64,000 bases of DNA from Macrostomum lignano (Eukaryota). Below are positions 12,648-63,638 of the stretch, in pieces. Position numbers and translations under genes: made by a program. The DNA lies in assembly GCA_002269645.1 (NCBI GenBank), contig NIVC01000200.1, forward strand, positions 644,543-708,542, in the 5' to 3' direction. The notes under the pieces are model-generated. The model ran no database searches. It worked only from the letters and a program-made list of their open reading frames with translations, and was not told the DNA's origin. Position 1 is the first letter of the stretch. Each line of letters starts with the position of its first letter.

Positions 12648-12825
12648 TAGGTTTTCGGAGACACAAAGCGTAGGAATTGTGAAAGAAGCTGATTGTGATT
12701 TTCTGAGATATCTGAAACCCTGAAAACCCTGCAGACCCTGCAGACCCTGCAGAGAAACCCTGCTACCTGCACATCCACTCCGATTGTGTTATGTTTGCCA
12801 GTCCAATATAGGAATGCATTATTAA

Positions 12826-21354: not shown

Positions 21355-22701
21355 ATGTGCAGACTTTTCTTCATGTGCAGATCAAGAATCATGAGGACAC
21401 AGTACAGGAATTAAGGGTTTGCTTCTGACAAAAAAAATTAAATAAAAATTGATTGAATATTTTCATCTGCACCTTCTGGAGACCGTAGAGCTTCATTCCT
21501 ATTTTAATTGGAACGGAGCCTACATTGTCTGGGCAACCAATCCCCATATTCTTCCTCAATTTTCCTTACTTTTGCACGCGATCCTCTCGAGATATTTCTT
21601 TTTTTAGTTACAGTACAGTGACGCTAAGGCACCGGTGTCCAATCGAAGAGAGGTGTCATGGCAACGACCTTGGAGTGCGTCACGTGACCGACTTTGGGAT
21701 TCTACATGTTTATAAACTGTTGACATTTTGAATTCAAAGTCTTCAGCCATCTGGGTCCTTGCACTCCTGCTTTGGTTCTTACGCAAGCTAGCTAGCTACA
21801 ATGCACCGCTCGCGACTCTACTCTACTCCCGGGACCGTGCCGACGATCGACCCACCGGCGGAGACTTGCTGTCCTAACTCTGGACGATACCAGCTAGTTA
21901 CATCAAATATGACAGCGATACTTCTGGATTATCAGAGCCTACAGACTGCTCCGCCAGCATTCTGTCACTCCAGCATCCTGTCTGTGCTTATTTCTTAACA
22001 GCGATCGTTTTCGAACCTATTCGCACTTGCTTATTGCTAAAAGATTAGATCGAGTCTGCACTTATCCGTGTGTTTAAATTTTCTTATTCCAGCACGTTAA
22101 CTTCACGATATAATTACGCCGATTAACTTTATTAGGCTGCTTATTTTTCCTGACTGCATTACTTAATCTGTACATCTGTAGCTCTATCCTAACTTTTTTT
22201 AACCATGGATAACTGCAGTGAAGGACGCTTCGAGCTATAATATACATACGATTTAAGAGATCGCATAGCACTCAATGGGGTTTCGCCATAGACAAATTCT
22301 GTGGAGAAACTCGAGTGTCTGTCTCATTCTGCTTCTAAATTGGAAAATCTTCATTTAAACAAAATTAACGTTAAGTTAGACGAACGCAAATCGCTTTTTC
22401 AACCATTTATTAATGTTATTCAGCTTTGAGACAAATAAGTCGTGTATTTATTGATTTTGATGTTAGTATGGAAGGCAAGAGAGCTATGGGGTCGTACTCT
22501 GCAGGTTCAGTGAACGTACATTATTCTGTTATTTTTGCCTAAATCTTAGTAACTACTTCGTCAAAATAATATTTTATCGAGATGAATCTAAGCGTGTAGG
22601 TAATTATTTCGGATAATTATAATAGATGGATGCACACTAATCGCTACCCTCTGTCAGATGCTACATGTAAATTAGTCAAGTAACTTGTTAACATATTGTT
22701 A

Positions 22702-32188: not shown

Positions 32189-35100
32189 CAACTAACTAAC
32201 TAACTGACTCACTAACTAACTAACTAACTGACTAACTAACTAACTAACTAACCAACTGACTAACTAACTAACTAACTAACCAAATAACTAAATAACTAAC
32301 AAAGCTAAACAACTTAGATTTTGAATAAATCGGCAACGCTAGAATTCGATATTTCTGTAAATATTTAAATTCTCACCGCCACAATACCAATGGCAGGCCC
32401 AGCATATAGCCACACATTCTCTCTAGCCGTCCAGCACCTGGAAATAAAAATTTTATTATTTTAATAAAAAGTGTACACAAAGCCTAAAAACTGATTGTTA
32501 CTGCATATTTGCGCACTTACATGTCAATAGCGTAATAACTGTTTCCGTTGATGCCGACAAAGGTGCCAACAAATGCAATTGGAACAACTGAAATAATTGG
32601 TAGGGCGGGTAATGAGGGTAGAGAGGGTGAAGAGTGTAGAGAGGGTGAAGAGGGTAGAGAGGGTGAAGAGGGTAGAGAGGTGAAGAGGGAAGAGAGGGTG
32701 AAGTGGGTAGAGAGGGTGAAGAGTGTAGAGAGGGTGAAGAGGGTAGAGAAAGTGAAGAGGGTAGAGAGGGTAGAGAGGGTAAAGAGGGTAGAGAGGGTGA
32801 AGAGGGTAGAGAGGGTAGAGAGGGTAAAGAGGGTAGAGAGGGTGAAGTGGGTAGAGAGGGTGAAGAGTGTAGAGAGGGTGAAGAGGGTAGAGATGGTAGA
32901 GAGGGTAGAGAGGGTGAAGAGGGTAGAGAGGGTGAAGAGGGTAGAGAGGGTAGAGAGGGTAGAGAGGGTGAAGAGGGTAGAGAGGGTGAAGAGGGTAGAG
33001 AGGGTAGAGAGGGTAAAGAGGGTAGAGAGGGTGAAGAGGGTAGAGAGGGTAGAGAGGGTAAAGAGGGTAGAGATGGTAGAGAGGGTAGAGAGGGTGAAGA
33101 GGGTAGAGAGGGTGAAGAGGGTACAGAGGGTAAAGAGGGTAGAGTGGGTGAAGAGTGTATAGAGGGTGAAGAGTGTAGAGAGGGTGAAGAGGGTAGAGAG
33201 GGTGAAGAGGGTAGAGATGGTAGAGAGGGTAGAGAGGGTGAGGAGGGTGGAGAGGGTGAAGAGGGTACAGAGGGTAAAGAGGGTAGAGTGGGTGAAGAGT
33301 GTATAGAGGGTGAAGAGTGTAGAGAGGGTTAAGAGGGTAGAGTGGGTGAAGAGTGTATAGAGGGTGAAGAGTGTAGAGAGGGTGAAGAGGGTAGAGCGGG
33401 TGAAGAGTGTATAGAGGGTGAAGAGTGTAGAGAGGGTGAAGAGGGTAGAGATGGTAGAGAGGGTAAAGAGGGTAGAGAGGGTGAAGAGGGTAGAGAGGGT
33501 AGAGAGGGTAAAGAGGATAGAGAGGGTGAAGAGAGTGGTGCTACAGACAGTAGCAAAGGTGGAGAAGCTAAGACTGTAATGAAGGGTTATGCTGAAATAA
33601 AATCATTCTAAATAAGTAACAAAAAATCAGCTGATAAAAGTTAGCTACGAAACATATCGGCAATTTTTTAATTTAATGAACTTCCAGTCTCGAGTCAACA
33701 ACTCACTCCAGCCAATTAGATAATAGCGCCACATGCCGCCCTCTTCAGAGCCGTCCTGGTGCGCATGAGCGGCATAGGTGATCACAATGTACAGATTGAA
33801 GGCTTCGTTCATTAGCCAGGAGAATGAGGCTAAGAAAAAATAGTGGATAAGTGCAGCCATGGAGTGGCACAGGGCCTGTGGAATTGAAATTGAAAATTAT
33901 AAGCTTAAATAAAAAAATCCATCTTTGCGCAAATAGTTCTACTATAAGTAGTTTTTAGTTTGAAATATTTTATCATTTTCAGAGCATCTATTTAGTTCTA
34001 ACTGAATTATTCAATTTGATTATTACTCGATTAATACATACGAAAAGCATTTTATTTAAAATGATACACTTTCTAATGGGTTACAAAACTTAATTAAATT
34101 CCAATAAATCAATCTATAATTCTTTCCCTTAACCAATCAATCAATAGATAATCAACCAGATGTGCAAGCATTTTAAAATCCTGCAGTCATTATTTCAATT
34201 GCTATCCATCAATACATCAGCAAATATATGAATTAAATACAGAAAAAAGGTCCCAAACCCTCAAGGGGCTCAAAGCGATCCCTATAAGCTCACATCCGGT
34301 TTGAGCTTGTCAATGCCGAACACGAACACCAACTGGCCGCAGACAATCGCCAATGAAAAGTGCTGATGAATTTTCGCTGTATTGGATGAAGTTCTGAAAA
34401 AAAGATATTTAAGTAAAATTTAAATAGTATAAGTTTTTAGTCTACGCGATAAAAATGGCGATAAAATGTGCAGCACTCTACCGAAAGTAAAATAAAAGGA
34501 CGCAAGTAGTCAGGCAAAGAATCGATGAAACGCCGCAGCCAATGTAGGACGGATAGGCTAGCAATTTCATGACGTCCTTGGTTCGATTCAACTGAAAATT
34601 AAATAAAAAAATACAAAATGAAAATTCATTTATTTAGAATTTCTTAATACCTATGTAATGCAGAAATAACGATTATACATGTGATTTTATAATAAAACTT
34701 AAAATAATTATCCTTCAATGTATAGTTTATAATTTGTCGGGATTAGAACGATGAATTCTAATTTTGTTTATTCATTAATTAGTTAAAACACCTGCAAGTA
34801 AATCTTTCTTCTCATGCAGTACCAGACTGAAAGTACGTTTCGGTTTATAATGATCAAATTATCGCAAATAACTTCAATGAATAGCATGGGAGCAGAGATA
34901 TTAAGTGATTCTGCTGACTCTAAATATATAAGGACTTATTTGGCTTTGCATGTAGCTGGCAATAAAATTCGATCAAGGCACTAACAATATCAGAAGCTTG
35001 AAAGTACTTGACAATATTTTATAGACATAAACGCGCACAATCGCATTTTTAACAGTTTTGCCAGGGGTTGATAGTGTCTGTGGATAAGATATAGCCGTCT

Positions 35101-43600: not shown

Positions 43601-46600
43601 ACGCCGTCAATTTGGTGATGTTCTCCATGCGGGTCAGCAGGCTGAGGCCCAGCAGTGGATAGCAGCTAATGTCCATAGCTGATAGGGAATTGCTCTGAAA
43701 TTGATGACGGTCAGAAATTTCTTTGTTAAAGATGACTTCAATGAGACTTCATTTACTGTAATCAATATATATATCATATATCATATATCATTATCTCAGT
43801 TACTTTGTATATCTTAGACTTATTGAAATTCTCGACACGGGGATAAAATGGAATTCATTACATTACAAACATACATGTACTGACATCCTGTTGTACATTC
43901 GGAATGAACTGTGCATGTACACACTGAATTAATAAATCATATACTAAATAGATAACAAACATACTGACATCATGGGCATACTGACGTCATGGACATACAT
44001 CATAGACATACTGACATCATAGACATACTGATGTCATGGACATACTGACATCATAGACATACTGACATCATAGACATACTGATGTCATGGACATACTGAC
44101 ATCATAGACATACTGACATCATAGACATACTGACATCATAGACATACTGACATCATTGACATACTGATGTCATGGACATACTGACATCATAGACATACTG
44201 ATGTCATGGACATACTGACATCATAGACATACTGACGTCATGGGCACACTAACATAACGGAACATCATACACGTGTAGAAAGTGGCCTTTCACTATTGAC
44301 CCGTAATCCCAACCAGAATAAACAATAAAACACTAACAATCCACGCACCTCATTTAAAATGTCCAGATGTTCTTTACTAACGCAACGATCGTAATTGGGC
44401 TGACTCCAGCTGCCCTGCTGTTTGCTGTTCCTCAGGCAGGACCGATAAGCGATGGGATGCGAGCCGTCTACAGCCAGGTTGATTTTGAGGGATTGAGTTA
44501 AATGAGTGTTTGCCTGCGGCGCCAAAATGAGTGTTTGCCTGCGGCGCCAAAATGAGTGTTTGCCTGCGGCGCCAAAATGAGTGTTTGCCTGCGGCGCCAA
44601 AATGAGTGTTTGCCAGTGGCGCCAAAACGAGTGAAAACAACACGGATTTCCAAAATAATATAGGAATTTAGTCATGTGTAGAACTCTTGGCTTTGCCCCC
44701 CTCACCATAAAATCCTTGGTCATAATTGAGTAGTCAGATCATATGTAGTTGAGTAAGCTTATTTTAATCCAGTAAAAACTGTGCTCATTCCTCACCAGTG
44801 GCATTCTCAATCTTCTCGGCAGTGGGGCATGGCACCGAGGTGCTCTGATCAGCCTTGGTTCTGGGCCATTCAATATTTGAGTCAATGCTTGCTTTGCACT
44901 GAGCGCCCATACGTTCGCTGCAGTTGAAATCGCAGGACTCTTGAAGGCTGGCCACCATGGCGTTTCTTGTGTGTTCGTCTGCAAATGCGGCAAGGCGTTG
45001 GTCGGCTTTTAAGGCTCAGGGGGTGTCTCTGCGATTCACACGAATGAGGACCAATCCCTAAGGCACTGAGAGTGCACATGCCTGAGGATTAGACAGTCAG
45101 GACCGATGTACACCCTGTGTGAGCGCGTACGAGTGCGTACCTGCGTACAGTACTGGCGCGCTTGCATGTGCTCAGGAGTCAGCGGAATGGGCAGAACTGC
45201 CTCGGCGCTGGCTGTAAGACGATGTCATCAAAGGCAGTCAGTGTCCAAACTATTTGTGCCTTTGTGGCTCTTATAGAGAGACAAGACAAAGACACAATTT
45301 CCAACAGTGCCTATGCCATCAACAAACTGCATTTGATTATCCTTAACCTTAAATCCTTAATCCCTCAATTCTACCGGTGCTGGGCATTAGCGTGGACATA
45401 ACCGCTGTTTGCTAAACTGGACCAATATCTATCTAATCAAATATTAGCCAACAGCGCCCATTGTCACATTTTGCATGACTTTCGTGTCTATCTATCAGCT
45501 ATTTATCTAGTATCTAATAGCAACGGAAGCCAATCTGATTACCAAATGGGTTTTAGTAATTAACTACAGTTAGTCCTTGGTGGGAATATTGCAAACTATA
45601 ATGTCAATAAAGTAATCCTCTGCTCACTGAACAAAGTAAACAAGCGAACTTGTAAATTTGCTGAGATACCAAAGCTCTTTAGGAGTTTCTGAGATGCTAA
45701 TGCTCTTTAGGAGTTTCTGAGATGCTAATGCTCTTTGGGGAGTTTCTGAGATGCTAATGCTCTTTGGGAGTTTCTGAGATGCTAATGCTCTTTAGGAGTT
45801 TCTGAGATGCTAATGCTCTTTGGGGAGTTTCTGAGATGCTAATGCTCTTTAGGAGTTTCTGAGATGCTAATGCTCTTTGGGGAGTTTCTGAGATGCTAAT
45901 GCTCTTTAGGAGTTTCTGAGATGCTAATGCTCTTTGGGGAGTTTCTGAGATGCTAATGCTCTTTAAGAGTTTCTGAGATGCTAATGCTCTTTAGGAGTTT
46001 CTGAGATGCTAATGCTCTTTAGGAGTTTCTGAGATGCTAATGCTCTTTAGGAGTTTCTGAGATGCTAATGCTCTTTAGGAGTTTCTGAGATGCTAATGCT
46101 CTTTAGGAGTTTCTGAGATGCTAATGCTCTTTAGGTAGTGTCTGAGATGCTAAGACTCAAATGGAGGGTTCATGGCTCCATGGCTTGAAAAAGAATTTGA
46201 TGCCTAAGCTCAAACAGGATGCTGATATTTTAGGCTAGGATAGCCGGCTTTTAGAGCAGATGCTTTTTAATTCAAACATAATTTTGTTGAAGAAACTGAC
46301 AATAGCGACCGTACAAGGCTTGCCAGCTCGTGCAGTGTATATGAAAAGTTTATTCGAAAAACCTTATTGCTGTCCTTTCCTTCGAAGACTGCCAGTACTT
46401 GCTTGAATGGTAACAGACATGGTCAATTTAGTTGTTCCAAGAATAAGAGTCTTAGCATCCAATTCTATTTATAATGCTTGCTCACGGATGTAAAAATTGT
46501 GCTGACAGAAGGACTATGACGCGTAATAATAGAAATGATTACATGGGGGGCTCGCACTCACACACGCTCACACAGAGTGTACAGCGGCCCTGACTTTCTA

Positions 46601-49600
46601 ATCGTGAGGCATGTACAGTCTCTGTTCATTGCGGGATGATATTCATAGCTGGGAATCGAAGGACAACCTCCTGGGCCAAATTTCGGGCACACAACCCAAC
46701 ACAGGAATTGAACCAGGGATCGAGTCAGACGCGTTTATCACTAAGGTTCTCTGCCCCCGACAGTGATACTATATGCTCAGTTAGTAGTCAGTTTAGTCAG
46801 TTAAAAGTGTCAAAGATACGGACGCATCAGGAAACTCCCAATTATAACGGCGGTAGCAACCACTCCGAACAGCGACAAGAATCTCTCGATAGCGCGGGCG
46901 GCCACCACCCAGTCTGAATCGTTCGATTTCTGTTCCGCCGCAGGAGGTTTCCGCACGCAGTCGCCGTCGCCCTCAGCCTCAGCCGGACTCTGCTGGCCCA
47001 CCTGTGACGCTGTGGCGCCGTTGACGCAGAGCAGGCGGCCCAGGCATCGAACAAAGACCGCCCGAGCGCATTTCGGCATGCGGCTGCCCTCCGGTCTGAA
47101 GTGGAACAGCATGACCAGCGATGTCAGCAGCAGCGACACGGTGGACAACATCATGGCGGCCGTGATGAACAGGGCGATGGCGGGCATCTTCTGCGACTTC
47201 GGCAGGATTCCGTCCAGAAGCAGCAGGAACACGGTGTAGCTGAGCATGATTGTGATGCCGAATCCCAGCTTCTCACCGGACTCCAGTGGCACAAAGTACA
47301 CCAGCACTTGGAGCAGAGTCAGCAGCAACAATGGCGTGATGATGTTGATGAAATAGTACGTTGACACTCGTTTCAAGCTCAATCGCAGAACAAAGGTCGA
47401 AAGTTTTATCTCTGGTTGTCCTACCGTGATCAGAAATTCTTTCAGTTCCACAGTAGCTGAGGCGTTCGTCACAGTCCACTCGTTGCTAGGCTTAAAAATG
47501 CCCATCACCCGCAAAGGATTTGCCTGGTTGATAATAGGGAACACTGTTTTGCTGTAGCCCTGATTATTGAAAAAGAACAGCAGTTCGCACTCGTGCCGAT
47601 CGTAGGGAAATTCGGTCATGTTAAATTCGCAGAAAAACTCGAACTCCCGGCGCCAGAATGCTGTTACTAATGTCTGGTTTGGATTCAACGATCCCAGTGT
47701 AACTGGGACCTGCGGCACCAGGATCTGGTCATTTCCATTTCCATTGTAGACCATGATGGTCGGATACCAGATCTGCGTGGCCTCCCAGCGAGTTTCTCTG
47801 ACGCCGCCAAAGTCGGCAGGATTCCACACGAGTCGCTCCTCCTCCCAGCTGGCTTGAAAGTAGGCAGAAATTTTCATGCTCTGTTGAGCAGTGTCCACTG
47901 AGACCAAGTGACTGATCATCACCTCTACAGACACGTTTATTACCATAGAGCTATTGATTCTGGGCAGTATCAATGGACTGTAGTTTGTAATGTTATTTTT
48001 CAAGTACTGCATCAGGCGGATTTCGTAATCTGGAGTTGCCGACGAAGTGACCGCTAGACAAGCGAGTAAAATCAATGCGACAAACATTCTTGTTTTTTTC
48101 TAACTTTTTCACCTTGAACATCAGTTGGGATTATCCGCATCGATAGAAGCTAAATATACTGGTAGAATTTTATTGCGTCTCAGCCTGGCCAATCAAAACG
48201 TTACTTCGGCTTCAATTCATTTCCATGAGTCTAATTTTGCATTGCTATTGGACGACAGACTGTATGACATGGAGATGCTTCCTGGAGGCGAACTGAATTT
48301 CAGTCACTAGATGACTCGCTGCGGGGACATCTTCAGCAATTGTAGATGACTCGCTGCGGGGACATCTTCAGCAATTGTAGATGACTCGCTGCGGGGACAT
48401 CTTCAGCAATTGTAGATGACTCGCTGCGGGGACATCTTCAGCAATTGTAGATGACTTACTGCAGGACATCTTCAGCAATTGTAGATGACTTACTGCAGGA
48501 CATCTTCAGCAATTGTAGATGACTTACTGCAGGACAGGAAATCTTCAGCAATTGTAGATGACTTACTGCAGGACATCTTCAGCAATTGTAGATGACTTAC
48601 TGCACGACATCTTCAGCAATTGTAGATGACTTACTGCAGGACATCTTCAGCAATTGTAGATGACTTACTGCAGGACATCTTCAGCAATTGTAGATGACTT
48701 ACTGCACGACATCTTCAGCAATTGTAGATGACTTACTGCACGACATCTTCAGCAATTGTAGATGACTTACTGCAGGACATCTTCAGCAATTGTAGATGAC
48801 TTACTGCAGGACATCTTCAGCAATTGTAGATGACTTACTGCACGACATCTTCAGCAATTGTAGATGACTTACTGCAGGACATCTTCAGCAATTGTAGATG
48901 ACTTACTGCAGGACATCTTCAGCAATTGTAGATGACTTACTGCAGGACATCTTCAGCAATTGTAGATGACTTACTGCAGGACATCTTCAGCAATTGTAGA
49001 TGACTTACTGCAGGACAGGACATCTTCAGCAATTGTAGATGACTTACTGCAGGACATCTTCAGCAATTGTAGATGACTTACTGCAGGACATCTTCAGCAA
49101 TTGTAGATGACTTACTGCAGGACAGGACATCTTCAGCAATTGTAGATGACTTACTGCAGGACATCTTCAGCAATTGTAGATGACTTACTGCAGGACATCT
49201 TCAGCAATTGTAGATGACTTACTGCAGGACATCTTCAGCAATTGTAGATGACTTACTGCAGGACAGGACATCTTCAGCAATTGTAGATGACTTACTGCAG
49301 GACATCTTCAGCAATTGTAGATGACTTACTGCAGGACATCTTCAGCAATTGTAGATGACTTACTGCAGGACAGGACATCTTCAGCAATTGTAGATGACTT
49401 ACTGCAGGACATCTTCAGCAATTGTAGATGACTTACTACAGGGACATCTTCATCAAGTAGATGACTCGCTGCAGGGACATCTTCAGCAAGTAGATGACTC
49501 GCTGCATGGACATATTCTAAGCTAGACTAGCAATCTAGTGCCACCCTTCGGGGCGGCCAATAAGCAGGGGACGAAAATTATTTATGTGAGTCCTATTTGC

Positions 49601-50579
49601 TATAACATCTTAGCAATACCCCCAGGCCTTGTCATCTCAGCAATCCCTCCCGTAAGAATTCAAGTCGAAAATTCTGCTTGACCTTTACAAAAAAGCATGT
49701 GAGTCATTCCAAATATGAGCACTGAACTCATTTCAAATAGTTCATTCCTTGACACAAACCGTCACAAAAAAATTACTGATCGAATGGTGCAAGTTTGAAG
49801 AAAATTTGTTGAGCCGTCTATCACACAGTTACGGACACTCATTTTTAGTATATTGGATGGACTAGCCATTTAGGCTCCCCTCCGGGGGGCGAAAAATGAC
49901 CCCCAAAGTAGTTTCCATTTGTGCCCGAGAGTAATTTAACTCATCAACAATGGAATGATGATTTCCATTAGTTAAATTACTTTTTCTCATTTATGGCAAA
50001 AGCCATTATCCCCAAGTAAGCAGCCAAAAAAGTTTCCTTCATCAGCCCAAAGCCTTTTTCTCAATCAGCAATTAATACTTATCTTAGCGGGATGGATCGT
50101 CATTAACCTGGGTATATTCTAGTTCCCGACAGCTCAATACGCCAATCCATGGCGGCCGTAGACCCCTCTTTATTAGCAGCAGTCGAAGAATCAAACTTCT
50201 TTACTAAAAATTTCCCGATAAACCTTCACATCTTAGCCATTCCCCAATGACCCTTGACATCTTAGCCATCCCCATGAGAAATGAATTCTTAGGAATTCCC
50301 CCATAAGTCTTTCATAGGTGACAGGGCGATTATTCTATGATTATACCCTAACCGTAACCCCCAAACTGACACAAAACCCTAATTCTAATATCATAAGTGA
50401 GTCTTAGTATCTTAGCAATTCCCCCATGAGCCTTGAGCCCTAGCATTTAAACAACTCCCTCATAAGCCTTGAAATCTCGACTTGCAATAGTAGCTAGTTT
50501 TATTTAATAGCTTGCTTTATACCAGACAGACAGACAGACACATACACAGAAAGACAGACAGACAGACAGACACACACAC

Positions 50580-50610
<31 letters not shown>

Positions 50611-53600
50611 CAGACAGACAGACAGACAGACAGAGACTCACTATAGACACCGCTGGACCCGAACTGAATGTTTGAAGGCCACTTGAGCGTCACGTTTCCG
50701 CGGGTGCCGTAGCGCAGGTCGGACCATTCCACCTGGTTGCCGCAGAACCGGTGTTTGTCATCCGTAGCCAGGGCGGCGACGTCCTCCCGGGTCAGAGTTT
50801 CGTTCCACATGTTGAAGTGGCTGATTTCGCCTAGCAAAGCGAATCTCATATCGAAATGATTGGAGGCATTCGGCGAGTTCTGTCCCAGGTAGAGTTCGGT
50901 TCGATTCGGCAGGGTGGCGCCTTCGGCGATGTTGGAGCCGCCTACGCTGCGTTTGATTTTCGGCGGCAGTGTGCCACCCTGCGGCGGTGTGATGTACACC
51001 TTCCAGTCGGTGCTGCGATTCCTCGGGTGCATCAGGTTCGTCCAGGCCAGGTGGTACCACTCGCGCGGACGCAGATTGTCGATCTGCAGGTTTAGGATTG
51101 GGGATTTAGGAGCGGATTAAGTCGGTCAGTTGCTCAATGACTATGAGCAGTCATTGAGAATTGTATGAGCTACCGAAACTCACTATATGAGCAGTCATTG
51201 AGAATCGTATGAGCTACTGGAACTCACTATATGAGCAGTCATTGAGAATTGTATGAGCTACCGGAACTCACTATATGAGCAGTCATTGAGAATTGTATGA
51301 GCTACCGGAACTCACTATATGAGCAGTCATTGAGAATTGTATGAGCTACCGGAACTCACTATATGAGCAGTCATTGAGAATCGTATGAGCTACCGAAACT
51401 CAGAATGAGCAGTCATTGAGAATAATGAGCTACCGGAACTCACTATATGAGCAGTCATTGAGAATCGTATGAGCTACAGGAACTCACTATATGAGCAGTC
51501 ATTGAGAATCGTATGAGCTATCGAAACTCAGAATGAGCAGTCATTGAGAATAATGAGCTACCGGAACTCACTATATGAGCAGTCATTGAGAATCATGAGC
51601 TACTGAAACTCACAATGAGCAGTCATTGAGAATCATGAGCTACCGAAACTCACAATGAGCAGTCATATAGAATCATGAGCTACTGAAACTCACAATGAGC
51701 AGTCATTGAGAATCATGAGCTACTGAAACTCACAATGAGCAGTCATTGAGAATCATGAGCTACCGAAACTCACAATGAGCAGTCATTGAGAATCATGAGC
51801 TACCGAAACTCACAATGAGCAGTCATATAGAATCATGAGCTACTGAAACTCACAATGAGCAGTCATTTAGAATCATGAGCTACCGAAACTCACAATGAGC
51901 AGTCATTGAGAATCATGAGCTACCGAAACTCACAATGAGCAGTCATTGAGAATCATGAGCTACCGAAACTCACAATGAGCAGTCATTGAGAATCAGATGA
52001 GCTACCGAAACTCACAATGAGCAGTCATTGAGAATCATATGATTTATTGGAAATCACTATGAGTAGTCATTCTAGATTTCTATATAAGCTACTGGAATTA
52101 TTACCATGAGCAGTCATACAGGTCTCATACGAGCTCCTATGAGCAGTCAAGCTAGCCAGAAAAAAACATTTCATAAAATTTAAGTGCTCACCTTGAACGA
52201 AAAGCTAAACTGAGGCGCCTCATTCGTTCTCCCAATCTGGAGCTCAGAATAAGTCTCGATGTGAAAGCGCCTATCGCTACCGCTGTACCAAATTCGCACA
52301 TAATTGCCGTGGCTGTCTTTGCGAAGCGAGAACAGCGTTCCAGTCTCATTGAGGTGGAACAGTTTAACGAATAGAGCGATGGTGAAGTTGTACTGCTTTG
52401 GCAGGATCTTTGTCCGGTTGTTAATGACAGCGTAAGATGCGTTGGCCCGGTTTGAGAACACCATACTTGAGTCCACCGCCAAGGCTGCGAGAGTCGAAGA
52501 CGGGTTTGGGGATTTGGAGAAAAAGTTTCCTTTAGCAGCTGGGGGTTTTCCGAATCTGATTCTTATCTGTGTGGGATTTTCACCGTGTGGGATTTTCAAC
52601 GTATGGGATTTTCGAGTGTGGGATTTTCTAAGTATGGGATTTTCATCGTGTGGGATTTTTGAGTGTGGAGTTTCGAGAGTGGGATTTTCACGTGTGGGGG
52701 ATTTTCGAGTGTGGGATTTTCACCGTGTGGGATTTTTAGCGTGGGATTTTCCAAGCATGGGATTTTCACCGTGTGGGATTTCCAACGTATGGGATTTTCA
52801 CCGTGTGGGATTTTCGAGTATAGGATTTTCGAGTGTGAGATTTTCTAAGTATGGGATTTTCACCGTGTGGGATTTTCGAGTGTGGGGTTTTCAGGTGTGG
52901 GGGATTTTCGAGTGTGGGATTTTCAGCGTTTGGGATTTTCACGTGTGGGGGATTTTCAGCGTGTGGGATTTTCACCGTGTGGGATTTTTAGCGTGGGATT
53001 TTCCAAGCATGGGATTTTCACCGTGTGGGATTTCCAACGTATGGGATTTTCACCGTGTGGGATTTCCAACGTATGGGATTTTCCCCGTGTGGGATTTGTG
53101 AGTATAGGATTTTCGAGTGTGAGATTTTCTAAGTATGGGATTTTCACCGTGTGGGATTTTCGAGTGTGGGGTTTTCAGGTGTGGGGGATTTTCGAGTGTG
53201 GGATTTTCAGCGTTTGGGATTTTCACGTGTGGGGGATTTTCGAGTGTGGGATTTTCACGTGTGGGGGATTTTCGAGTGTGGGATTTTTAGCGTGGGATTT
53301 TCCAAGCATGGGATTTTTACCGTGTGGGATTTCCAACGTATGGGATTTTCGAGTGTGGGATTTTCCAAGTATGGGATTTTCATCGTGTGGGATTTTCGAG
53401 TGTGGAGTTTCGAGAGTGGGATTTTCACGTGTGGGGGATTTTCGAGTGTGGGATTTTCAGCGTTTGGGATTTTCACGTGTGGGGGATTTTCAGCGTGTGG
53501 GATTTTCACCGTGTGGGATTTTTAGCGTGGGATTTTCCAAGCATGGGATTTTTACCGTGTGGGATTTCCAACGTATGGGATTTTCGAGTGTGGGATTTTC

Positions 53601-55734: not shown

Positions 55735-56030
55735 GGCAGGCCGTAGCCCAGCGGTCTAGCGCAGGCTCTGATGTGCAGTCACATTAATTTGGGGCTAAAT
55801 TGAAATCTCGGCTTGGCTCCGCCCGTGCAATTAACGGCCTGGAGGCCCAACCCCCAAGGCGCAGTGAAGTGTACATGCCTAACGATAAATAAAGTTAGGG
55901 CCGCTGTACACTCCTGTGTGAGTGCCTGTGCGTATCACTGCGTACGTATCCGCGCGCTTGTTTGCCTGCTCAGGGGAGTCGGCGGAATGGGCAGCAATGC
56001 CTCTCGCCGGTTGTGTGACAATGTCGCTTG
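55735..56030 (+). mobile_element. Most complete copy of a putative tRNA-derived SINE
   Basis: A-box-like TAGCCCAGCGG at ~55744, no clear B box, and a body shared with three other loci in the window. Confidence 0.45.
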
Positions 56031-57506: not shown

Positions 57507-58634
57507 TCAATCGGTCAATTTCAGCTTCTCCAGCTGCTGCATCAAATCCAGTTTGCTAGCCAGCTTCTTTTCTTGATCAGAATCGGGTTTAGAGACGCTG
57601 CCGTCAGCTAGGCGGGCTTCCAGGGCTTCGATTTGACGCAGTTTCTTTTGTAGTTTGCGAATCTGCTGCTTGTTGTCTTCTTGCACTTGCTGCTGCTGTT
57701 GCTTCTTTTGCGGCTCCTGTTGCTGCTGTTTCGGCTGCTGCTGTGGTTGAGGCTAAAAATATCGGCGACAGTGGACGTTATTACAGTGAGATGACAGTGT
57801 CAGGAAAGTAAATAAAGTGTCATGGGGAGTTAATGAGGTGTCAGGGAGAGACAGTGAGGTGTCGGAAGAGACAGTAAGGTGTCAGGAGAGACAGTAAGGT
57901 GTCAGGAGAGACAGTGAGGTGTCAGCAGAGACAGTGAGGTGTCAGGAGAGACAGTAAGGTGTCAGGAGAGACAGTGAGGTGTCAGCAGAGACAGTGAGGT
58001 GTCAGGAGAGACAGTGAGGTGTCAGCAGAGACAGTGAGGTGTCAGGAGAGACAGTGAGGTCTTAAGAGCCAACGTGACAGACAGAGCAGGCGTCAGGATT
58101 AATCGAAATATGAAATATGCAAACCAACAATTGCTTCTGAAAAATGCAATCTACCTGTTGTTGCTGTTGTTTCTGCTTCCGCTTGCCAGTGGACTCGTTC
58201 CATTCGGAATTTGTCTCGGAAGCTTGCGGTTGCTGTGGCTTAGCCCCAGATGCTGATTGGCTGGGGGCAACCGGTTGAGACTGTTGTTGCTGCTGCTGTT
58301 GCTGCTTCTGTCGCTTCCTTCGAGCCGCCTTTGCCGACGAAGAGGACGCTATTGAAGCATCGCCAGCTGCCGACGTCGCTGCCGGAGCCTCCTTCGGGAT
58401 GATACGTAACGGCGGTGGGACCGCGGCAGCCGCAGCCGCCTCTGCTTCGCGTTGTTGAGCCGCCCGAGTCTTGTAGAGCGGCACCTCCTCCTGGGGTATG
58501 TAGCCTTCGCGGACGCGCACCGGCTTGCGCCAGGAACCGTCCGGCCTCTGGCTGGCCGGGATTATCAGCTGACCGTCGGCCGCTCGGACAACGCCTTCGC
58601 GTTGGATTCCCGCGGTAGAGTTGCCGGTTGACAT
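57507..58634 (-). CDS. PYM1: Partner of Y14 and mago (PYM/wibg); exons 58155-58634 and 57507-57752
   Basis: N-terminal [31 protein letters not shown] (Mago-binding motif) and C-terminal [15 protein letters not shown]...DQEKKL; in-phase GT-AG intron. Confidence 0.93.
57790..58062. repeat. 20-bp minisatellite (GTGTCAGGAGAGACAGTGAG) in the PYM intron
   Basis: Direct. Confidence 0.93.
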
Positions 58635-58645
58635 CACTTTGTTGG

Positions 58646-59350
58646 GCAGACGAGTGTACACTGCAGGGAATGAGGGGTTTGAGGGGAGTCGGTCGCGGGC
58701 AGACGAGTGTACACTGCAGGGAATGAGGGGTTTGAGGGGAGTTGGTCGTGGGCAGACGAGTGTACACTGCAGGGAATGAGGGGTTTGAGGGGAGTTGGTC
58801 GCGGGCAGACGAGTGTACACTGCAGGGAATGAGGGGTTTGAGGGGAGTCGGTCGCGGGCAGACGAGTGTACACTGCAGGGAATGAGGGGTTTGAGGGGAG
58901 TTGGTCGTGGGCAGACGAGTGTACACTGCAGGGAATGAGGGTTTGAGGGGAGTTGGTCGCGGGCAGACGAGTGTACACTGCAGGGATAGAGGGGTTTGAG
59001 GGGAGTCGGTCGCGGGTAGACGAGTGTACACTGCAGGGAATGAGGGGTTTGAGGGGAGTCGGTCGCGGGCAGACGAGTGTACACTGCAGGGAATGAGGGG
59101 TTTGAGGGGAGTTGGTCGCGGGCAGACGAGTGTATACTGCAGGGAATGAGGGGTTTGAGGGGAGTCGGTCGCGGGCAGACGAGTGTACACTGCAGGGAAT
59201 GAGGGGTTTGAGGGGAGTCGGTCGCGGGCAGACGAGTGTACACTGCAGGGAATGAGGGGTTTGAGGGGAGTCGATCGCGGGCAGACGAGTGTACACTGCA
59301 GGGAATGAGGGGTTTGAGGGGAGTCGGTCGCGGGCAGACGAGTGTACACT
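58646..59350. repeat. 53-bp minisatellite immediately 5' of the PYM start codon
   Basis: 13 periods plus a partial copy; the unit contains CCCTGCAG|TGTACACTC on the PYM sense strand. Confidence 0.95.
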
Positions 59351-61617
59351 GGAAGAAAATTAAAAAAAAAGGAAAGATGCAAATGCCTCAGTATAGGCGC
59401 TTCCGACTTTAATGCCGAATATATATTTTCAAGGATAAGTGACACAGCTTCACCTGAGCACTAGACAAGGCACGCACTCGTACATGTGCAGTAAAACATT
59501 ACACAAACACTTTAGCTTAGATAGTTCGAAGAATATTTTTAATGAAATGAGTAGATTTGAAATAACTTGACTTAAAAAATCCAAGAAATAAAGTAGCTAG
59601 GTTACAAATCAATTATTAATTAATAGTACCTAGGTCACAGCACACAAAACAAGGATATAAGTAAAAGTACATATAAATAGTACCATTCATTCCTAGATAA
59701 TAATTTATCGCTAGCTAAAACAAGCATAAACAACAACGAAAATGAAAATGAAGTTTTCTTTAATGAAAAAGCTCACTTTGTACACAAATTAATTTTATAT
59801 AATTCTGCTAGTCACAGGTACAAGGTAGATGAAATGCAAAAAAATCATAAGACGAGAAATAACTGTATATGTAGGTTTGAAAATAGTAAATGAGCAAATC
59901 AATATTATGTTAAATTATAAGTGCAAATTATGTTCAAGTACGATGAAAAAAATATAATAAATATAGCTTTTGTCAGACAAGTTACTAGATAATAAATAAA
60001 ACCAAGGGAGAGAGAGAGAGAGAGTCGATGAGAGGTTGTTGCTGGCATCCTTCTTGATGTTGATGCTGTCTATGGCCGAACTTGGTTGTTTGGTTGTTTT
60101 TTTCGACTATGTCTATGTGCAAGACCAAATAATCTAATGCTGCCAAACAGAAATTCTTAACTTGGTTGGGCTTAACTTATCAACTTATCAAAAGCTTCGC
60201 CACAGACAGTCGTTTGTCAACGGAACGATTAGTCAAGATAATATCATTTACAGAAACTTGAACTGATTCTAGCTGATTGATTTACGAGTAAAAAGCTTTC
60301 ATATTCAACATTATGGGAGGAAAACCAAATACGCGAAACGCAAAACGTTGAGCTACATATCGTCATTGTTAGTCAGGAAAAAATCTAATCAAAGATGACA
60401 GTCTTCGCATTCGCGAGTGAAACTCTTAACTCTTGCAAAGTGCAGAGTTGGAAAAGCTTTACGATCGGTGACGTCGAATTCTGTAACGCAGGAATCGCGA
60501 ATGGAGCTTCTGCAAGTTATTTGAGATATTGTTGCGATTTTTATTGTTCCACTTTTTATATACTATTTGTACTACTAGCAATTTATAATCAGTAGCAAAG
60601 TGTGAAAACGTTTTAATGGGTAGATTAGTTTAGTTTAAATCTCAGCTAAACTCCCTAAATCCAAAAACATTGAGTGTGTAAAGATGTCTAATAAATGCCA
60701 GAGCCGCTGTGAACCTTGTGACAGTGTCTAAGTGTCTCAGAGCCACCTAATTGACATTTAGAACATTTTGAGAACCATATTTAATGTAACAAATTGTATA
60801 AAAATTAGTATTTCGTCTACCACAATCTCAATCAGTCTGAAGCAAGTGCTTCCAATTAACAAGAAGCGGTCTCAGTTCGTGAAGACGAAAGGCTGCAAAA
60901 GAATCAATCGACTGGAGATATCGATTTTGTTTCGTTGGCTGCTTTACAGAGACTTGAACAATATTGAGTTGCGTAGAACTAATTTGTATTCCGACTAACC
61001 ACATGTAAATCCAGTTTTAAGATACAACTCCAAGAGAGAAGGAAAAAAATCACAAAAAATCTAGTAGATTATATTGGTAAATTAGCACTTTTTCTTAGAA
61101 TTTTATAAGCTGCTGAGCCGCAGAGAGTATAAGTATGCGGAAGTAGTTAAAACTATTGTTAAAGACTTTTAAAGAATATCCAACAAAATGTCGATAAAAA
61201 CGATTGATTTTTTTTATGATTCGAATCTTCGCCTGGGAGATTCTAGCATATGTATACGCTCTAAAGTAGTTTGGATAAAATAGGGAATAGAAAAAGGGGA
61301 ATCTGGCAGCGCTAGTCTAGCGTAACAGTTATTGGCTGCAGCCTAGAAACCGACTGTTAACCACAAATTCAGCAGTATGCGCTGCCAAAAGCCAGCCAAT
61401 AGCGGCCTGTCTGCAGTTGACCTAGATCCACCGAAACTTCTAGAGCTAATAAAAATCCTAACCAAGAAGAGGCTGATAAGGATTTTTTAAAACTATATTG
61501 TTTTGCTCTAGTTTTTAATTCACCAAGGCCACTCTGTCAAGGTTGATATTACACAAAAGAAGGCATGTTCAAGTTTGCTTGACTTTTCTGTAGCACTGTC
61601 GACTCTCGAAAGCTCAG

Positions 61618-63638
61618 ATGGATCGGGACCTAAACAAGAGCAGCGACCGGTACAGACGTCGTGTACTGTTTGCCAACATACACAGCTTTGCCAGTAGGAC
61701 ATCAGCTCATGGTCTTAGTAGATTCTTCTCTCAGCAGATACCTTGGCTGAGACTACTATGGATAGTAGTTGTAATGGGCGCGCTTACAGGACTGACAATG
61801 CACACTTACAAGCAGATTAGTCTGTTTCGCGACTATCCAGTGTCCAGCACAACCCGGCTACTAACTAACAAGTTCACATTTCCAGACGTGACAATATGCG
61901 ATCCGTTAATGAAAAAGTTTCTACGCAAACAGTCGAGCGATTTGCGGCGCAGCAACGAGTCGATATTGAACTATTTCGTGCTCAGCTACATGATGGCTAT
62001 GCAATTTGCCAATAATAAAAACAGCAATCAATCAGACGAGGCCATCTCGGTGCAAGCAACAAAGATGGCCTACGCCAGCTTCGAACACGCGGTGCACACT
62101 TGGCCAATTTTCAACATGACCGAAGTGAGCGCTAGAATGCTAGACATGCTAGTCTTCTGCCAATACAATCAGGAAACTTGCAGCGAAAAAGACTTCAAAG
62201 TGTTTTATCATCGCGACTACGGCAACTGCTTTTCATTCAAGCCGCACAACAGGCTGATGAAGTCCAGTGGAGTTGAAAAAGGCTTAGTATTAGTCCTCTA
62301 CAGCCCGAGCGTTGACCATATTCAGAACAATGACTGGTACAGCAATATTGTTACTACTGGACTAGAGACAGGCGGACTCAGAGTTGTGGTCCATCAGAAA
62401 GTAAATTATGATATATTTATTTTTTTCAACTCGTACATAGACAGCAATAGTAATTAAATAATATCTTTCATTTTAACAGGACACGATCCCGTATCCAAGC
62501 GAGTACGGCATCAACTCGCCAAGCGGTATGCAAACTGTGCTGGCTCTGAACCAGGTGCAAACTAGTCTGGCTAATACGCCAACAAAACAATGCGAGCCAA
62601 GGACCAGATTCCATGCTTACGATCACATTTTAGGGTGAGTAGGCGATAGGTGAGAAAAAACGTGAAAATGACTTTCCATGGTAATTTTCACTATTAACCC
62701 AATGAAAATTCTTCGTTTAAAAGCCTCACACTACAAGACTTTTAATGAAATGGTATTTAGCATCTTTGCAATGTTACTCTAAGCAAATATCGATTGAGTT
62801 TCTAATTTTCGCATTTGCTTATTACAGAAACACACAGAGCTACGAGAAGCAATTAACCGACTGCACAACATTTGAGCACATGAAGCGAGTCAGAGACAAG
62901 TGCAACTGCACCATAGAAGGCCCGGTACCAACGGAAACTTACGGAAGCGGCGAGCGACGAATCAATTTTTGTCACGACATTATGGGCGCTCAAAATCCCG
63001 AGAGAACGATTAAGCTGATAAAAAATATGGTGGAATTTCTGAGAAAGAATCGAAACGATTTAATAAACCCTCGCAATAATCAATTGAACATGCTAGCCTA
63101 CAATAACCTGCCAATGCACGAGAAGCAAGCCATCTCAGCAGCTTTAGAGCACGAGTTTCACAATGAGGTCAAACAAAGGTTAAAAAGTCTTCGCTGCGCA
63201 CTGCCCGAGCTTAGGTCTGGTCGCAGCCAGTCCAAGTGCCTCAACATGTGCAAGTACACAACGTACGACTTCTCAGTGTTTCAAAGCCGTTGGCCCGACC
63301 TCAGCCTAGAGATTCGGGTGCCAATATAAGACTAGCAAGAATTGCTCAAATGTTAAAAAATCGAGTGGACAGCTTGAACAGGAATATAACAAACAATCAC
63401 GCGCTTAATCACTCGATTGCGTCACATAATTTAAATCTTAGTCACTGCATGGTGAATGAGCTCAATCTGAAGAGCAACAAGTTTAGAAACGATACTTATT
63501 GCAACCAGGTGCACAACATTATCAGACAGTGCTTCCTGCAGTTGCGCGTGTACCCGAAGACGCTCACTGTCAGACAACTGTTTGAGGAAAGAAGCTACGA
63601 ATTGGTGAATCTATTCTCTGATTTAGGCGGAATCATGG
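61618..63638 (+). CDS. DEG/ENaC (ASIC/FaNaC-like) channel, 5' partial; exons 61618-62400, 62480-62634, 62828-63638; apparent 1-bp frameshift near 63305
   Basis: TSAHG, TM1, FPDVTIC, YGNCFSF, GLVLVL, GLRVVVH, CNC, and terminal SYELVNLFSDLGGIMG|GTAAGC. The last exon(s) are not in the window. Confidence 0.88.

What the first reader, a model, noticed from the sequence alone, without database searches (positions are those of the whole stretch)
46810..48087. Intronless Cys-loop receptor without the acetylcholine aromatic box, nested same-strand in a GPCR intron
Seen: a complete single-exon ORF inside intron 44940-50650, bracketed by two minisatellites. Loop A Tyr is kept, but loop B Trp (here LLFFFNNQ) and loop C YxCC..Y (here ELKEFLITVGQPEIKLSTF) are absent. 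GEK at the M2 -1' position implies cation selectivity. Established: cephalopod chemotactile receptors are divergent nAChR-like channels that lost ACh binding and detect poorly soluble compounds. Inference: an independent, possibly retroposed chemosensory receptor of an undescribed lineage-specific family.
Basis: partly seen in the sequence, partly recalled or inferred. Interest (0 to 1): 0.7.

Follow-up and report, generated by a model that had tools for sequence, protein, structure and literature searches.

The report
Orphan nicotinic-type channel gene in flatworm
This is a real, intact, intron-free gene for a very divergent nicotinic-receptor-like cation channel subunit of the flatworm Macrostomum, one of a handful of such genes found only in that genus. 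Nothing here shows that it is a chemosensory receptor.

Summary
Window 46810-48087 (minus strand) is a complete 425-codon single-exon ORF. It has a signal peptide, a Cys-loop ligand-binding domain, four membrane helices and a GEK cation-type pore motif. It lies inside a GT..AG, phase-1 intron (44979-50641) of a same-strand Pentaxin-HRM-7tm_2 adhesion GPCR.

The loop A Tyr is kept. The loop B Trp, the loop C Cys-Cys and the second loop C Tyr are gone. Aromatic residues remain at or near two box positions (loop D Tyr76, loop C Phe218).

The locus is Macrostomum lignano or a very near relative. The gene belongs to a small Macrostomum-only clade (NJ bootstrap 100/100, longest stem in the tree, at most 33% identity to anything else). 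Three clade members form a same-strand tandem array of intronless genes elsewhere in M. lignano. So intronlessness is ancestral to the clade, and no poly-A trace marks this copy.

The gene is under purifying selection. It is a mosaic: its channel half (46858-47397) is 89-100% identical in DNA to paralog g3, while its ligand-binding half is 49-87% identical.

The flanking minisatellites carry no meaning, because about 41% of the surrounding region is tandem repeat. Intronless, tandemly duplicated orphan nAChR-like genes are already described in lophotrochozoans. The chemosensory reading remains untested.

The parts
46810..48087 (-). Complete single-exon CDS (425 aa plus stop) of a divergent non-alpha nAChR-like Cys-loop subunit ('WIN')
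48034..48087 (-). Predicted signal peptide (aa 1-18, MFVALILLACLAVTSSAT). The ATG has A at -3.
   Evidence: Sequence read directly; N-terminal helix 2-12 in the model. The cleavage site is inferred.
47368..48033 (-). Extracellular ligand-binding domain (aa 19-240), with 7 N-glycosylation sequons and the clade-specific motif WRREFEF in beta6
47587..47631 (-). Cys-loop C153-C167 (CEFNMTEFPYDRHEC)
   Evidence: C153, P161, D163 and C167 are invariant in an 86-sequence alignment
47101..47367 (-). M1-M3 channel module (aa 241-329); 72-98% identical (mean 79%) among the five clade members, with the M2 helix and M2-M3 loop nearly invariant
47269..47277 (-). GEK (G271, E272, K273) at M2 positions -2', -1' and 0': the cation-type selectivity filter
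   Evidence: the rule itself from PMC9874803
46825..46914 (-). M4 helix (aa 392-421), preceded by a short intracellular loop (aa 330-391, window 46915-47100)
46858..47397 (-). Tract of 89-100% nucleotide identity to M. lignano paralog g3 (L001 12825-14105). The rest of the gene is 49-87% identical. Inferred to be a gene-conversion or recombination tract.
48088..48307 (-). 220-bp 5' flank between the ATG and the minisatellite, with CCAAT at -164, ATTGG at -106 and TATATTTA at -71. This is a candidate own promoter, inferred only.
44979..50641 (-). Host intron (GT at 50641/50640, AG at 44980/44979, phase 1) between the Pentaxin exon and the HRM exon of an adhesion GPCR
50642..51104 (-). Host exon: C-terminal part of the Pentaxin domain
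44794..44978 (-). Host exon: first half of the hormone-receptor (HRM) domain; its end is approximate
48308..49517 (.). 34-bp minisatellite (about 35 copies) 5' of the gene. It is not specific to the gene.
45661..46153 (.). 28-bp minisatellite (about 17 copies) 3' of the gene. It is not specific to the gene.
46540..46780 (.). Interspersed repeat (SINE/MITE-like) starting about 30 nt after the stop codon, with other copies in the window and in L001

Best explanation
SHOWN
- The ORF is a selectively maintained gene for a non-alpha, nicotinic-type pentameric ligand-gated channel subunit.
- It belongs to a small clade found only in Macrostomum. The known members are this gene, g1, g2 and g3 in a tandem array on M. 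lignano contig NIVC01000059.1, and P0002.
- Every member whose locus could be read is intronless.
- This copy is a dispersed, unannotated member that sits in an intron of a same-strand Pentaxin-HRM adhesion GPCR.
- Its channel half was recently homogenised or recombined with paralog g3, while its ligand-binding half is much older.

INFERRED MECHANISM
- The protein is secreted into the membrane through its signal peptide. It assembles into pentamers, most plausibly with itself or with its clade paralogs, which share an almost identical M1-M3 module.
- It conducts cations. E at -4', E at -1' and D at 19' form rings of negative charge, L9' forms the gate, and there are no anion-type Pro or Thr13' changes.
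- The gating hardware is intact: the Cys-loop FPYD, the pre-M1 Arg240 and the M2-M3 Pro296.
- An interface made only of these subunits cannot form a canonical ACh site. On the principal face the loop B Trp, the loop C Cys-Cys and Y198 are missing. On the complementary face the loop D Trp is Tyr here and is Leu, Ile, Tyr or Phe in the paralogs.
- The agonist is therefore most likely not ACh bound in the classical way. The variable ligand-binding domains joined to one conserved pore suggest that the paralogs differ in what they bind.
- What the ligand is, and in which cells the gene is expressed, is unknown.
- Its position in the GPCR intron is most simply an accident of duplication in a repeat-rich genome.
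For: - Gene identity and fold.
- Species: the M. lignano 'Pentaxin' model A0A1I8IZB6 matches the host exons at 94-100%, even across its frameshifted segments.
- Clade: only P0001/P0007, P0002, P0003 and P0008 exceed 54% identity, and everything else is at or below 34%. NJ bootstrap is 100/100 and the stem length is 0.74 against a median internal branch of 0.058.
- Tandem intronless paralogs.
- Constraint: dN/dS against the paralogs is 0.20-0.39. In M1-M3 against g3, pN is 0.01. This gene differs at only 2 of 132 positions invariant in the other four members, fewer than any other member. Its LBD changed less than g3's (11-15 against 26-27 unique changes).
- Mosaic: synonymous difference is 0.50 in the LBD and 0.14 in TMD+ICD (Fisher p = 5e-11), with a sharp identity break at about 47397.
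- Pore and binding-loop residues.
- GEK against PAR/PAK rule: PMC9874803.
- Precedent for intronless, tandem, orphan nAChR-like genes in lophotrochozoans: PMC6896357 and PMC10338036.
Against: - There is no transcript, protein or physiological evidence of any kind, so expression is assumed from sequence constraint.
- Residue equivalences in loops B and C depend on the alignment. I could not inspect model coordinates or build a pentamer.
- Aromatic residues remain at loop A (Y114), near Y190 (F218) and at loop D (Y76), so weak or atypical cholinergic binding is not excluded.
- Many non-alpha subunits that lack these residues work normally as accessory subunits of ACh-gated receptors.
- The paralog census is limited to what public protein sets and one 21-kb locus show.
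- The direction and mechanism of the mosaic (conversion or domain recombination) are not resolved.
Confidence: 0.6

Rival explanations
1. It is an ordinary accessory (structural, beta1/beta3/alpha5-like) subunit. It co-assembles with canonical Macrostomum alpha subunits in ACh-gated receptors and contributes to neither binding face, or only to a weak one.
For: It is a non-alpha subunit with intact pore and gating elements and clear nAChR similarity. Loss of binding residues is normal for accessory subunits (established knowledge). In some bootstrap replicates its nearest neighbour is an Aplysia 'unc-29-like beta' protein, in 20 of 100.
Against: No stable grouping with any beta clade appears, and the clade has the longest stem in the tree. 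The loop D Trp that ACh-binding complementary subunits keep is not conserved within the clade. Five paralogs share one near-identical pore but have LBDs only 37-57% identical, which looks more like diversification of binding than a passive structural role.
Confidence: 0.27
2. It belongs to an independently evolved chemoreceptor family analogous to cephalopod chemotactile receptors, expressed in epidermal sensory cells and gated by environmental (for example poorly soluble) compounds.
For: It shares several CR traits: nAChR descent, loss of ACh-site residues, intronless genes, tandem arrays and a cation pore (CR traits from PMC11526382 and PMC10338036). The LBDs are variable on a conserved channel.
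Against: Only about five paralogs are known, which is not an expansion of chemoreceptor size. Pairwise dN/dS in the LBD is 0.33-0.45 with no window above 1 outside the converted tract. The conserved clade motif WRREFEF is charged rather than hydrophobic. There are no expression data. No chemotactile-receptor entry appears among the top 60 sequence matches or top 50 fold matches in the PDB.
Confidence: 0.1
3. It is a silent dispersed duplicate, that is, a young pseudogene or unexpressed copy stranded in an intron. It looks intact only because part of it was recently overwritten by conversion from a working paralog.
For: It is a solitary copy away from the tandem array and is not in any public gene set. 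Its 3' half is nearly identical to g3. Intron-poor nAChR copies in bivalves are more often unexpressed (PMC6896357).
Against: The unconverted LBD half (dS about 0.85 from g3) is also intact and has dN/dS 0.33-0.35. This copy is the most conservative member of the clade at invariant sites (2 of 132) and evolves more slowly than g3. It has its own ATG in good context, a signal peptide, and CCAAT/TATA-like motifs upstream. g1 and g3 are also not among the called genes of their locus, so absence from gene sets says little.
Confidence: 0.06
4. It is a recent retrocopy of a g3-like mRNA inserted into the GPCR intron.
For: It is intronless and dispersed, and its 3' half is very similar to g3.
Against: The parent clade is itself intronless, so lack of introns says nothing about this copy. 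High identity covers only an internal 540-bp tract and fades before the stop codon. There is no UTR homology, and no A-run within 500 nt after the stop. The 5' half is old, with dS about 0.85.
Confidence: 0.04

Closest known systems
Lophotrochozoan lineage-specific intronless, tandem nAChR-like expansions (Jiao et al. 2019, PMC6896357)
   Same: Both are nAChR-derived, intronless, arranged in same-strand tandem arrays with dispersed copies, lineage-specific and highly divergent in sequence, with function unknown.
   Different: That work describes molluscs and annelids with tens to hundreds of copies, and the word 'Platyhelminthes' does not occur in it. Here the setting is a flatworm genus with only about five copies. 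This copy is nested in a GPCR intron and is a conversion mosaic.
Alpo4 and the Alpo orphan nAChR-like receptors of Alvinella pompejana (PDB 8BX5 and related; PMC10338036)
   Same: Both are isolated lophotrochozoan nAChR-like subunits without the loop C Cys-Cys, with no known agonist and a cation-type fold. There is direct sequence similarity at E = 1.6e-32 over residues 25-416.
   Different: Alpo4 keeps the aromatic cage, including loop B W159, loop C Y199 and Y205, and loop D W65. The Macrostomum protein has lost the loop B Trp, the Y198 equivalent and the loop D Trp.
Cephalopod chemotactile receptors (CRs)
   Same: Both are nAChR-derived non-selective cation channels that lost ACh-binding signatures, and both are intronless genes (PMC11526382).
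   Different: CRs are a cephalopod family with shown sucker expression, hydrophobic agonists and diversifying selection in the pocket. None of these is shown here. No CR entry is among the best PDB matches, so any resemblance would be convergent.
Vertebrate and invertebrate non-alpha nAChR subunits (beta1-4, gamma, delta, epsilon; unc-29 type)
   Same: There is no vicinal Cys pair. The GEK pore, overall fold and length are the same, with best PDB E-values of 1e-37 to 1e-26.
   Different: Identity is 22-27%. The clade stands on its own long branch. The loop B Trp and loop D Trp, which most of these subunits keep, are missing.
Schistosome acetylcholine-gated chloride channels (SmACCs; PMC4055736)
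   Same: Both are flatworm nAChR-like subunits that depart from classical nicotinic function.
   Different: SmACCs carry the anion motif (PAR/PAK) before M2. This protein has GEK and is predicted to be cationic.

Membership tests
Cys-loop / pentameric ligand-gated ion channel superfamily | Neur_chan_LBD plus Neur_chan_memb domains, and four TM helices with M4 after a cytoplasmic loop | tested here: met
   Pfam 9.1e-29 and 6.1e-22. The model has helices 242-263, 273-294, 303-329 and 392-421.
Cys-loop / pentameric ligand-gated ion channel superfamily | Disulfide loop of two Cys separated by 13 residues, with an FPxD core | tested here: met
   C153...C167 is CEFNMTEFPYDRHEC. Both Cys, P161 and D163 are invariant in 86 sequences.
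Nicotinic (cationic) branch of the superfamily | Closest relatives are nAChR subunits rather than GABA, Gly, GluCl or 5-HT3 | tested here: met
   59 of the top 60 PDB sequence matches are nAChR subunits, and the remaining one is the betaine receptor ACR-23. All top 50 fold matches are nAChR subunits. Named nearest proteins are 'nAChR alpha-9/10-like' and 'beta-like'.
Nicotinic (cationic) branch of the superfamily | Cation-type selectivity filter: Glu at M2 -1', no Pro insertion at -2', Val rather than Thr at 13' | tested here: met
   The sequence is ...PLESGEKLGFGITIMLSYTVF.... The rule is cited from PMC9874803. Ion selectivity itself was not measured.
Alpha-type (agonist-binding principal) nAChR subunit | Vicinal Cys-Cys at the tip of loop C | tested here: not met
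   The loop C tip is LITVGQPE. There is no Cys between C167 and C340.
Alpha-type (agonist-binding principal) nAChR subunit | Aromatic box: loop A Tyr, loop B Trp, loop C Tyr190 and Tyr198 | tested here: not met
   Loop A Y114 is present. Loop B Trp is replaced by N174 or F173. Y198 is replaced by L229. Y190 is replaced by F218 or I220, depending on the alignment.
Conventional beta/gamma/delta-type complementary subunit | Loop D Trp (W55/W57) on the complementary face | tested here: not met
   It is Y76 here, and L, I, Y and F in g1, g2, g3 and P0002.
Conventional beta/gamma/delta-type complementary subunit | Phylogenetic grouping with a recognised beta clade | tested here: inconclusive
   In the NJ tree of 88 sequences the Macrostomum clade scores 100/100, but its sister is unresolved, with the best candidate at 20/100. 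No ML tree and no curated reference set were used.
Cephalopod chemotactile receptors | Common descent with octopus and squid CRs | not tested
   No CR sequence was available for a tree. No CR entry appears among the top PDB sequence or fold matches, which argues against closeness.
Cephalopod chemotactile receptors | Intronless genes in tandem clusters, with loss of ACh-binding residues | tested here: met
   These traits are shared with many lophotrochozoan nAChR-like genes, so they are not diagnostic.
Cephalopod chemotactile receptors | Expression in sensory epithelium, and activation by poorly soluble environmental compounds rather than ACh | not testable with these tools
   No expression or physiological data were reachable.
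Cephalopod chemotactile receptors | Diversifying selection on pocket residues | tested here: inconclusive
   Pairwise dN/dS in LBD windows is 0.15-0.45. There are too few sequences for site models.
Retrogene (processed copy) | Lacks the introns that its parent gene has | tested here: not met
   The nearest paralogs g1, g2 and g3 are themselves single-exon. No intron-bearing parent was found.
Retrogene (processed copy) | Poly-A remnant and target-site duplications at the ends of the insert | tested here: not met
   There is no run of 8 or more A within 510 nt after the stop, and AATAAA occurs only at +456. Target-site duplications could not be sought because the insert ends are unknown.
Nested gene in a host intron | Lies wholly between two exons of one host gene, with splice sites and frame compatible | tested here: met
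   The intron runs GT(50641)...AG(44979) in phase 1 and keeps the frame from Pentaxin to HRM. The Pentaxin, HRM and 7tm_2 domains lie in order on the minus strand. That they form one transcript is inferred.

The most novel reading that the evidence does not exclude
The Macrostomum clade (this gene plus g1, g2, g3 and P0002) is a second, independent conversion of nicotinic receptors into receptors for something other than acetylcholine. The ligand could be environmental or a new internal signal. In this reading, a single conserved cation-pore module is recombined by gene conversion with divergent ligand-binding domains, and that is how new specificities are generated.
Probability: 0.12. Interest if true: 0.65.

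Novelty: new member of a known kind. Interest (0 to 1): 0.32.

Why it matters
If the clade proves to be gated by a non-cholinergic ligand, it would be another case, besides the cephalopod chemotactile receptors, of a neurotransmitter-receptor scaffold being reused. It would also be in a transgenic, RNAi-tractable flatworm model.

The practical yield today is smaller:
- An unannotated, intact ion-channel gene hidden in an intron of an adhesion GPCR.
- Two more unannotated paralogs (g1 and g3) in the public M. lignano assembly.
- A clear example of a conversion or recombination mosaic that keeps the channel half uniform while the ligand-binding half diverges.

The case also carries a caution. 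Intronlessness, flanking minisatellites and loss of the ACh box are common features of lophotrochozoan nAChR-like genes and of this repeat-rich genome. They do not by themselves indicate retroposition or chemosensation.

Tried and rejected
- Exact look-ups of this protein, of P0001 and of the host Pentaxin model in the contig index found nothing. Only P0007 gave a locus.
- tRNA and Rfam scans of 43-52 kb found nothing. The repeat 3' of the gene looked tRNA-like by eye, but it is only an interspersed repeat.
- The bacterial-type promoter/terminator scan is uninformative for a eukaryote.
- Alignment of the 5' flanks of the four paralogs showed no conserved promoter block.
- No second copy or fragment of the gene is present in the window.
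- No adhesion-GPCR exons lie near the M. lignano tandem array. The nesting is therefore specific to this copy and not a property of the family.
A multi-exon gene was not excluded.
- I first read the 81% match to M. lignano Pentaxin as meaning a different species. tblastn then showed 94-100% identity across frameshifted pieces of that gene model, so I rejected that reading.
- The idea that the near-identity of M1-M3 among all paralogs is due to conversion was rejected. Synonymous differences there are 0.49-0.60 for every pair except this gene and g3.
- I did not use the last word-index homology search, because the exhaustive search had already answered the census question.
Full report

Yes. The ORF listing gives one ORF at 46810..48087 on the minus strand: 425 aa, with an ATG start. 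An in-frame stop lies four codons upstream of the ATG. It therefore cannot be read as an internal exon continuing an upstream frame.

Pfam finds Neur_chan_LBD (9.1e-29) and Neur_chan_memb (6.1e-22). The best solved relatives by sequence are nAChR alpha1, alpha3 and alpha7, at E from 3e-41 to 1e-39.

An AlphaFold2 model built on an 86-sequence alignment has mean pLDDT 89.6 and pTM 0.80. It shows the expected beta-sandwich and helices M1-M4. Its 50 best PDB fold matches are all nAChR subunits, at E about 1e-32 to 1e-29 with target-normalised TM 0.73-0.91.

**2. Residue-level claims**

- The Cys-loop is C153-C167 with FPYD.
- Loop A Tyr (Y114) is present, and it is invariant in all five clade members.
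- The loop B Trp is missing. MAFFT without a gap puts N174 there. HMMER with a one-residue gap puts F173 there. In the model, strand beta7 ends at F173.
- Loop C has no Cys-Cys. Counting back from the invariant pre-M1 Arg240, the Y198 equivalent is L229.
- The Y190 equivalent is F218 by MAFFT and I220 by HMMER. Position 218 is F or Y in every clade member.
- The loop D Trp is Y76 here, and L, I, Y and F in the paralogs.
- The classical box is therefore reduced to one strictly kept residue plus two aromatic residues whose equivalence is approximate (Y76) or alignment-dependent (F218).
- M2 reads ESGEK-LGFGITIMLSYTVFLLLLDG. It has E at -4', E at -1', K at 0', L at 9', V at 13' and D at 19', with no Pro insertion. 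This matches the cation-type pattern as summarised for flatworm LGICs in PMC9874803.

**3. Context**

On the same (minus) strand the window carries, in order:
- an EGF-like exon (weak match);
- two Pentaxin exons at 52200-52464 and 50642-51104 (Pfam 3.9e-11);
- an HRM exon at about 44794-44978 (1.4e-5);
- a weak GAIN match;
- 7tm_2 exons at 33648-33896 (2.7e-11).

A GTGAGT donor lies at 50641 and a TTTGCAG acceptor ends at 44979. Together they give a phase-1 intron. Removing it keeps one open frame from Pentaxin into HRM. The channel ORF lies wholly inside that intron. No transcript evidence was available.

The two minisatellites are real. However, about 24 arrays occupy roughly 14.5 of the 35.5 kb around the gene (my sum). 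Any 1.3-kb feature here would be 'bracketed' by them.

**4. Whose genome?**

The only hits above 50% identity are uncharacterised Macrostomum lignano proteins.

The host exons match the M. lignano gene model A0A1I8IZB6 ('Pentaxin') at 94-100%. This holds even across stretches that the model reads in another frame. The window is therefore M. lignano or a very near relative. The apparent 81% identity was an artefact of a frameshifted model.

This channel protein itself is in no public protein set.

**5. The family**

An exhaustive HMMER scan of 1.84 billion representative proteins returns P0002 (58%), P0003 (57%) and P0008 (68% over a 184-aa fragment). Identity then falls to 34% or less. The high-scoring long hits are fused tandem models from hemichordates, bivalves, annelids and nemerteans.

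The nearest named single-domain proteins are 'alpha-9/10-like' or 'beta-like' nAChRs of a nemertean, a starfish, corals, amphioxus and a hemichordate.

In an NJ tree of 88 sequences over 400 columns, the Macrostomum sequences form a clade in 100 of 100 bootstraps. The clade sits on the longest internal branch of the tree (0.74 against a median of 0.058). No sister group is reproducible, and the best candidate appears in 20 of 100 replicates. The refutation condition 'groups with conventional beta subunits' is not met, though an ML tree with curated references is still needed.

**6. Paralogs in M. lignano**

The locus of PAA92206.1 (contig NIVC01000059.1, fetched as L001) holds three intact single-exon paralogs in a row on one strand:
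- g1, ORF listed at 7863-9188 (first ATG at 7884);
- g2, 10001-11305;
- g3, ORF listed at 12783-14105 (first ATG at 12825).

A C-terminal fragment lies at 16333-16674. Only g2 is among the called genes of that locus. No adhesion-GPCR exons are nearby.

Intronlessness is thus a property of the whole clade, and the family's usual arrangement is a tandem array. The window copy is a dispersed member.

[quoted passage not shown] Any retroposition would have happened at the root of the clade, not at this locus.

At this locus there is no A-run after the stop, and AATAAA occurs only at +456. Homology to g3 does not reach either flank.

**7. Is it alive?**

Nei-Gojobori dN/dS against the paralogs is 0.20-0.39. 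In M1-M3 against g3, pN is 0.01.

The window gene differs at only 2 of the 132 positions that are invariant in the other four members. The corresponding counts for the other members are 12 to 30. Relative-rate counts show its LBD changed less than g3's, with 11-15 unique changes against 26-27.

It has an ATG with A at -3 and a signal peptide. Upstream it has CCAAT, ATTGG and TATA-like motifs at -164, -106 and -71, although these are not conserved among the paralogs.

A decaying pseudogene is unlikely. Expression remains unproven.

**8. A mosaic**

Against g3, the proportion of synonymous differences is 0.50 in the LBD and 0.14 in TMD+ICD. In the normally fast-evolving cytoplasmic loop it is 0.03-0.07. 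The contrast gives Fisher p = 5e-11.

Nucleotide identity jumps from 64-69% to 89-100% at about 47397. It stays high to about 46858, then drops to 76% in the last 45 nt.

All other paralog pairs have near-saturated synonymous differences in M1-M3 (0.49-0.60). The near-identity of the pore among them therefore reflects selection, while the tract shared with g3 reflects a recent conversion or recombination event.

The breakpoint falls at the LBD/pre-M1 junction. The result is an old ligand-binding half joined to a young channel half.

**9. How it most likely works**

Shown: this is a constrained gene for a non-alpha, nicotinic-type subunit with intact gating elements and a cation-type pore.

Inferred:
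- It forms pentamers, most plausibly with itself or with clade paralogs. Among the five members M1-M3 is 72-98% identical (mean 79%), while the LBDs are 37-57% identical.
- It passes cations.
- Interfaces built from these subunits lack the key residues of both faces of a classical ACh site, so the agonist is probably something else.

The main rival is an accessory subunit of ordinary ACh-gated heteromers. This cannot be excluded from sequence.

The chemosensory reading is possible but has no positive evidence. The family is small. LBD dN/dS is well below 1. The conserved clade motif WRREFEF in beta6 is charged rather than hydrophobic.

**10. Comparison and novelty**

The closest described situation is the set of lophotrochozoan orphan nAChR-like genes. 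These include the intronless tandem expansions (PMC6896357) and Alpo4, which also lacks the Cys-Cys and has no known agonist but keeps its aromatic cage (PMC10338036).

Cephalopod chemotactile receptors share nAChR descent, loss of the ACh site, intronlessness and a cation pore (PMC11526382). Their defining features are sensory expression, hydrophobic agonists and diversifying selection. These are untested or not met here.

Schistosome ACCs differ by their anion motif.

I file this as a new, unannotated member of a known kind. The flatworm setting, the nesting and the conversion mosaic are modest additions.

**11. Limits**

- There are no expression data.
- The tree is NJ only.
- The paralog census is limited to public protein sets and one 21-kb locus.
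- No CR sequences were in hand.

Noticed in passing
L001 (M. lignano NIVC01000059.1) 7863-9188, 12783-14105, 16333-16674: Two further intact single-exon nAChR-like genes (g1, g3) and a C-terminal fragment flank the annotated PAA92206.1 gene in a same-strand tandem array. They are not among the called genes of that locus. P0003 looks like a frameshifted model of g3.
   Followed up: yes
window 46858-47397 versus L001 about 13500-14050: There is a sharp switch from about 65% to 89-100% nucleotide identity between the window gene and g3, exactly at the junction between the ligand-binding domain and the channel. This indicates a gene-conversion or recombination tract.
   Followed up: yes
window 4250-9445 (+): BEL/Pao-type LTR retrotransposon coding region (DUF1759 gag-like, Peptidase_A17, RVT_1, Integrase_H2C2, DUF5641), split over several overlapping ORFs and so probably frameshifted.
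   Followed up: partly
window 825-3154 and 19059-21394 (+): A segmental duplicate of about 2.3 kb at 95% identity. Each copy carries a long single-exon ORF (1497-3113, 538 aa; 19432-21354, 640 aa). By eye from the translation the product looks like a multi-pass membrane protein with a Cys-rich tail. It has no Pfam match.
   Followed up: partly
window 61618-62457 and 62745-63329 (+): Exons of a DEG/ENaC (amiloride-sensitive sodium channel, Pfam ASC 1.7e-31) gene at the right end of the window. This is a second ion-channel gene in the neighbourhood.
   Followed up: partly
window 58062-59243 (-): An ORF with a Mago-binding (PYM-like) motif (1.4e-14). Its upstream part runs in frame through a 53-bp minisatellite (58644-59351).
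   Followed up: no
window 23900-59400: Extreme density of mini- and microsatellites: about 24 arrays covering about 41% of the sequence, many inside introns of the adhesion GPCR. Several give long spurious repeat ORFs on both strands.
   Followed up: partly
window 46540-46780; also 45013-45137 (inverted), 55870-55933, 11898-11958; L001 4192-4275, 15242-15345: An interspersed repeat of about 240 bp (SINE/MITE-like), 76-84% identical between copies. One copy starts about 30 nt after the stop codon of the channel gene. It is recognised neither as a tRNA nor by Rfam.
   Followed up: partly
window 11264-11743, 11984-12328 (+); 17093-17605 (-): A Tc1/mariner-type DDE_3 transposase remnant at 11264-11743 (Pfam 4.1e-10), a similar-looking unscanned ORF at 11984-12328, and a THAP-domain ORF at 17093-17605.
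   Followed up: no
P0172 (UniProt A0A1I8IZB6, M. lignano 'Pentaxin'): This public gene model for the host locus is frameshifted. Its C-terminal tail weakly resembles a translation of the 34-bp intronic minisatellite (tblastn E = 9e-4, 47% identity, at 48377-48523). The adhesion GPCR therefore appears mis-annotated as a short pentaxin.
   Followed up: partly
A multi-exon gene is not excluded.
   Followed up: partly
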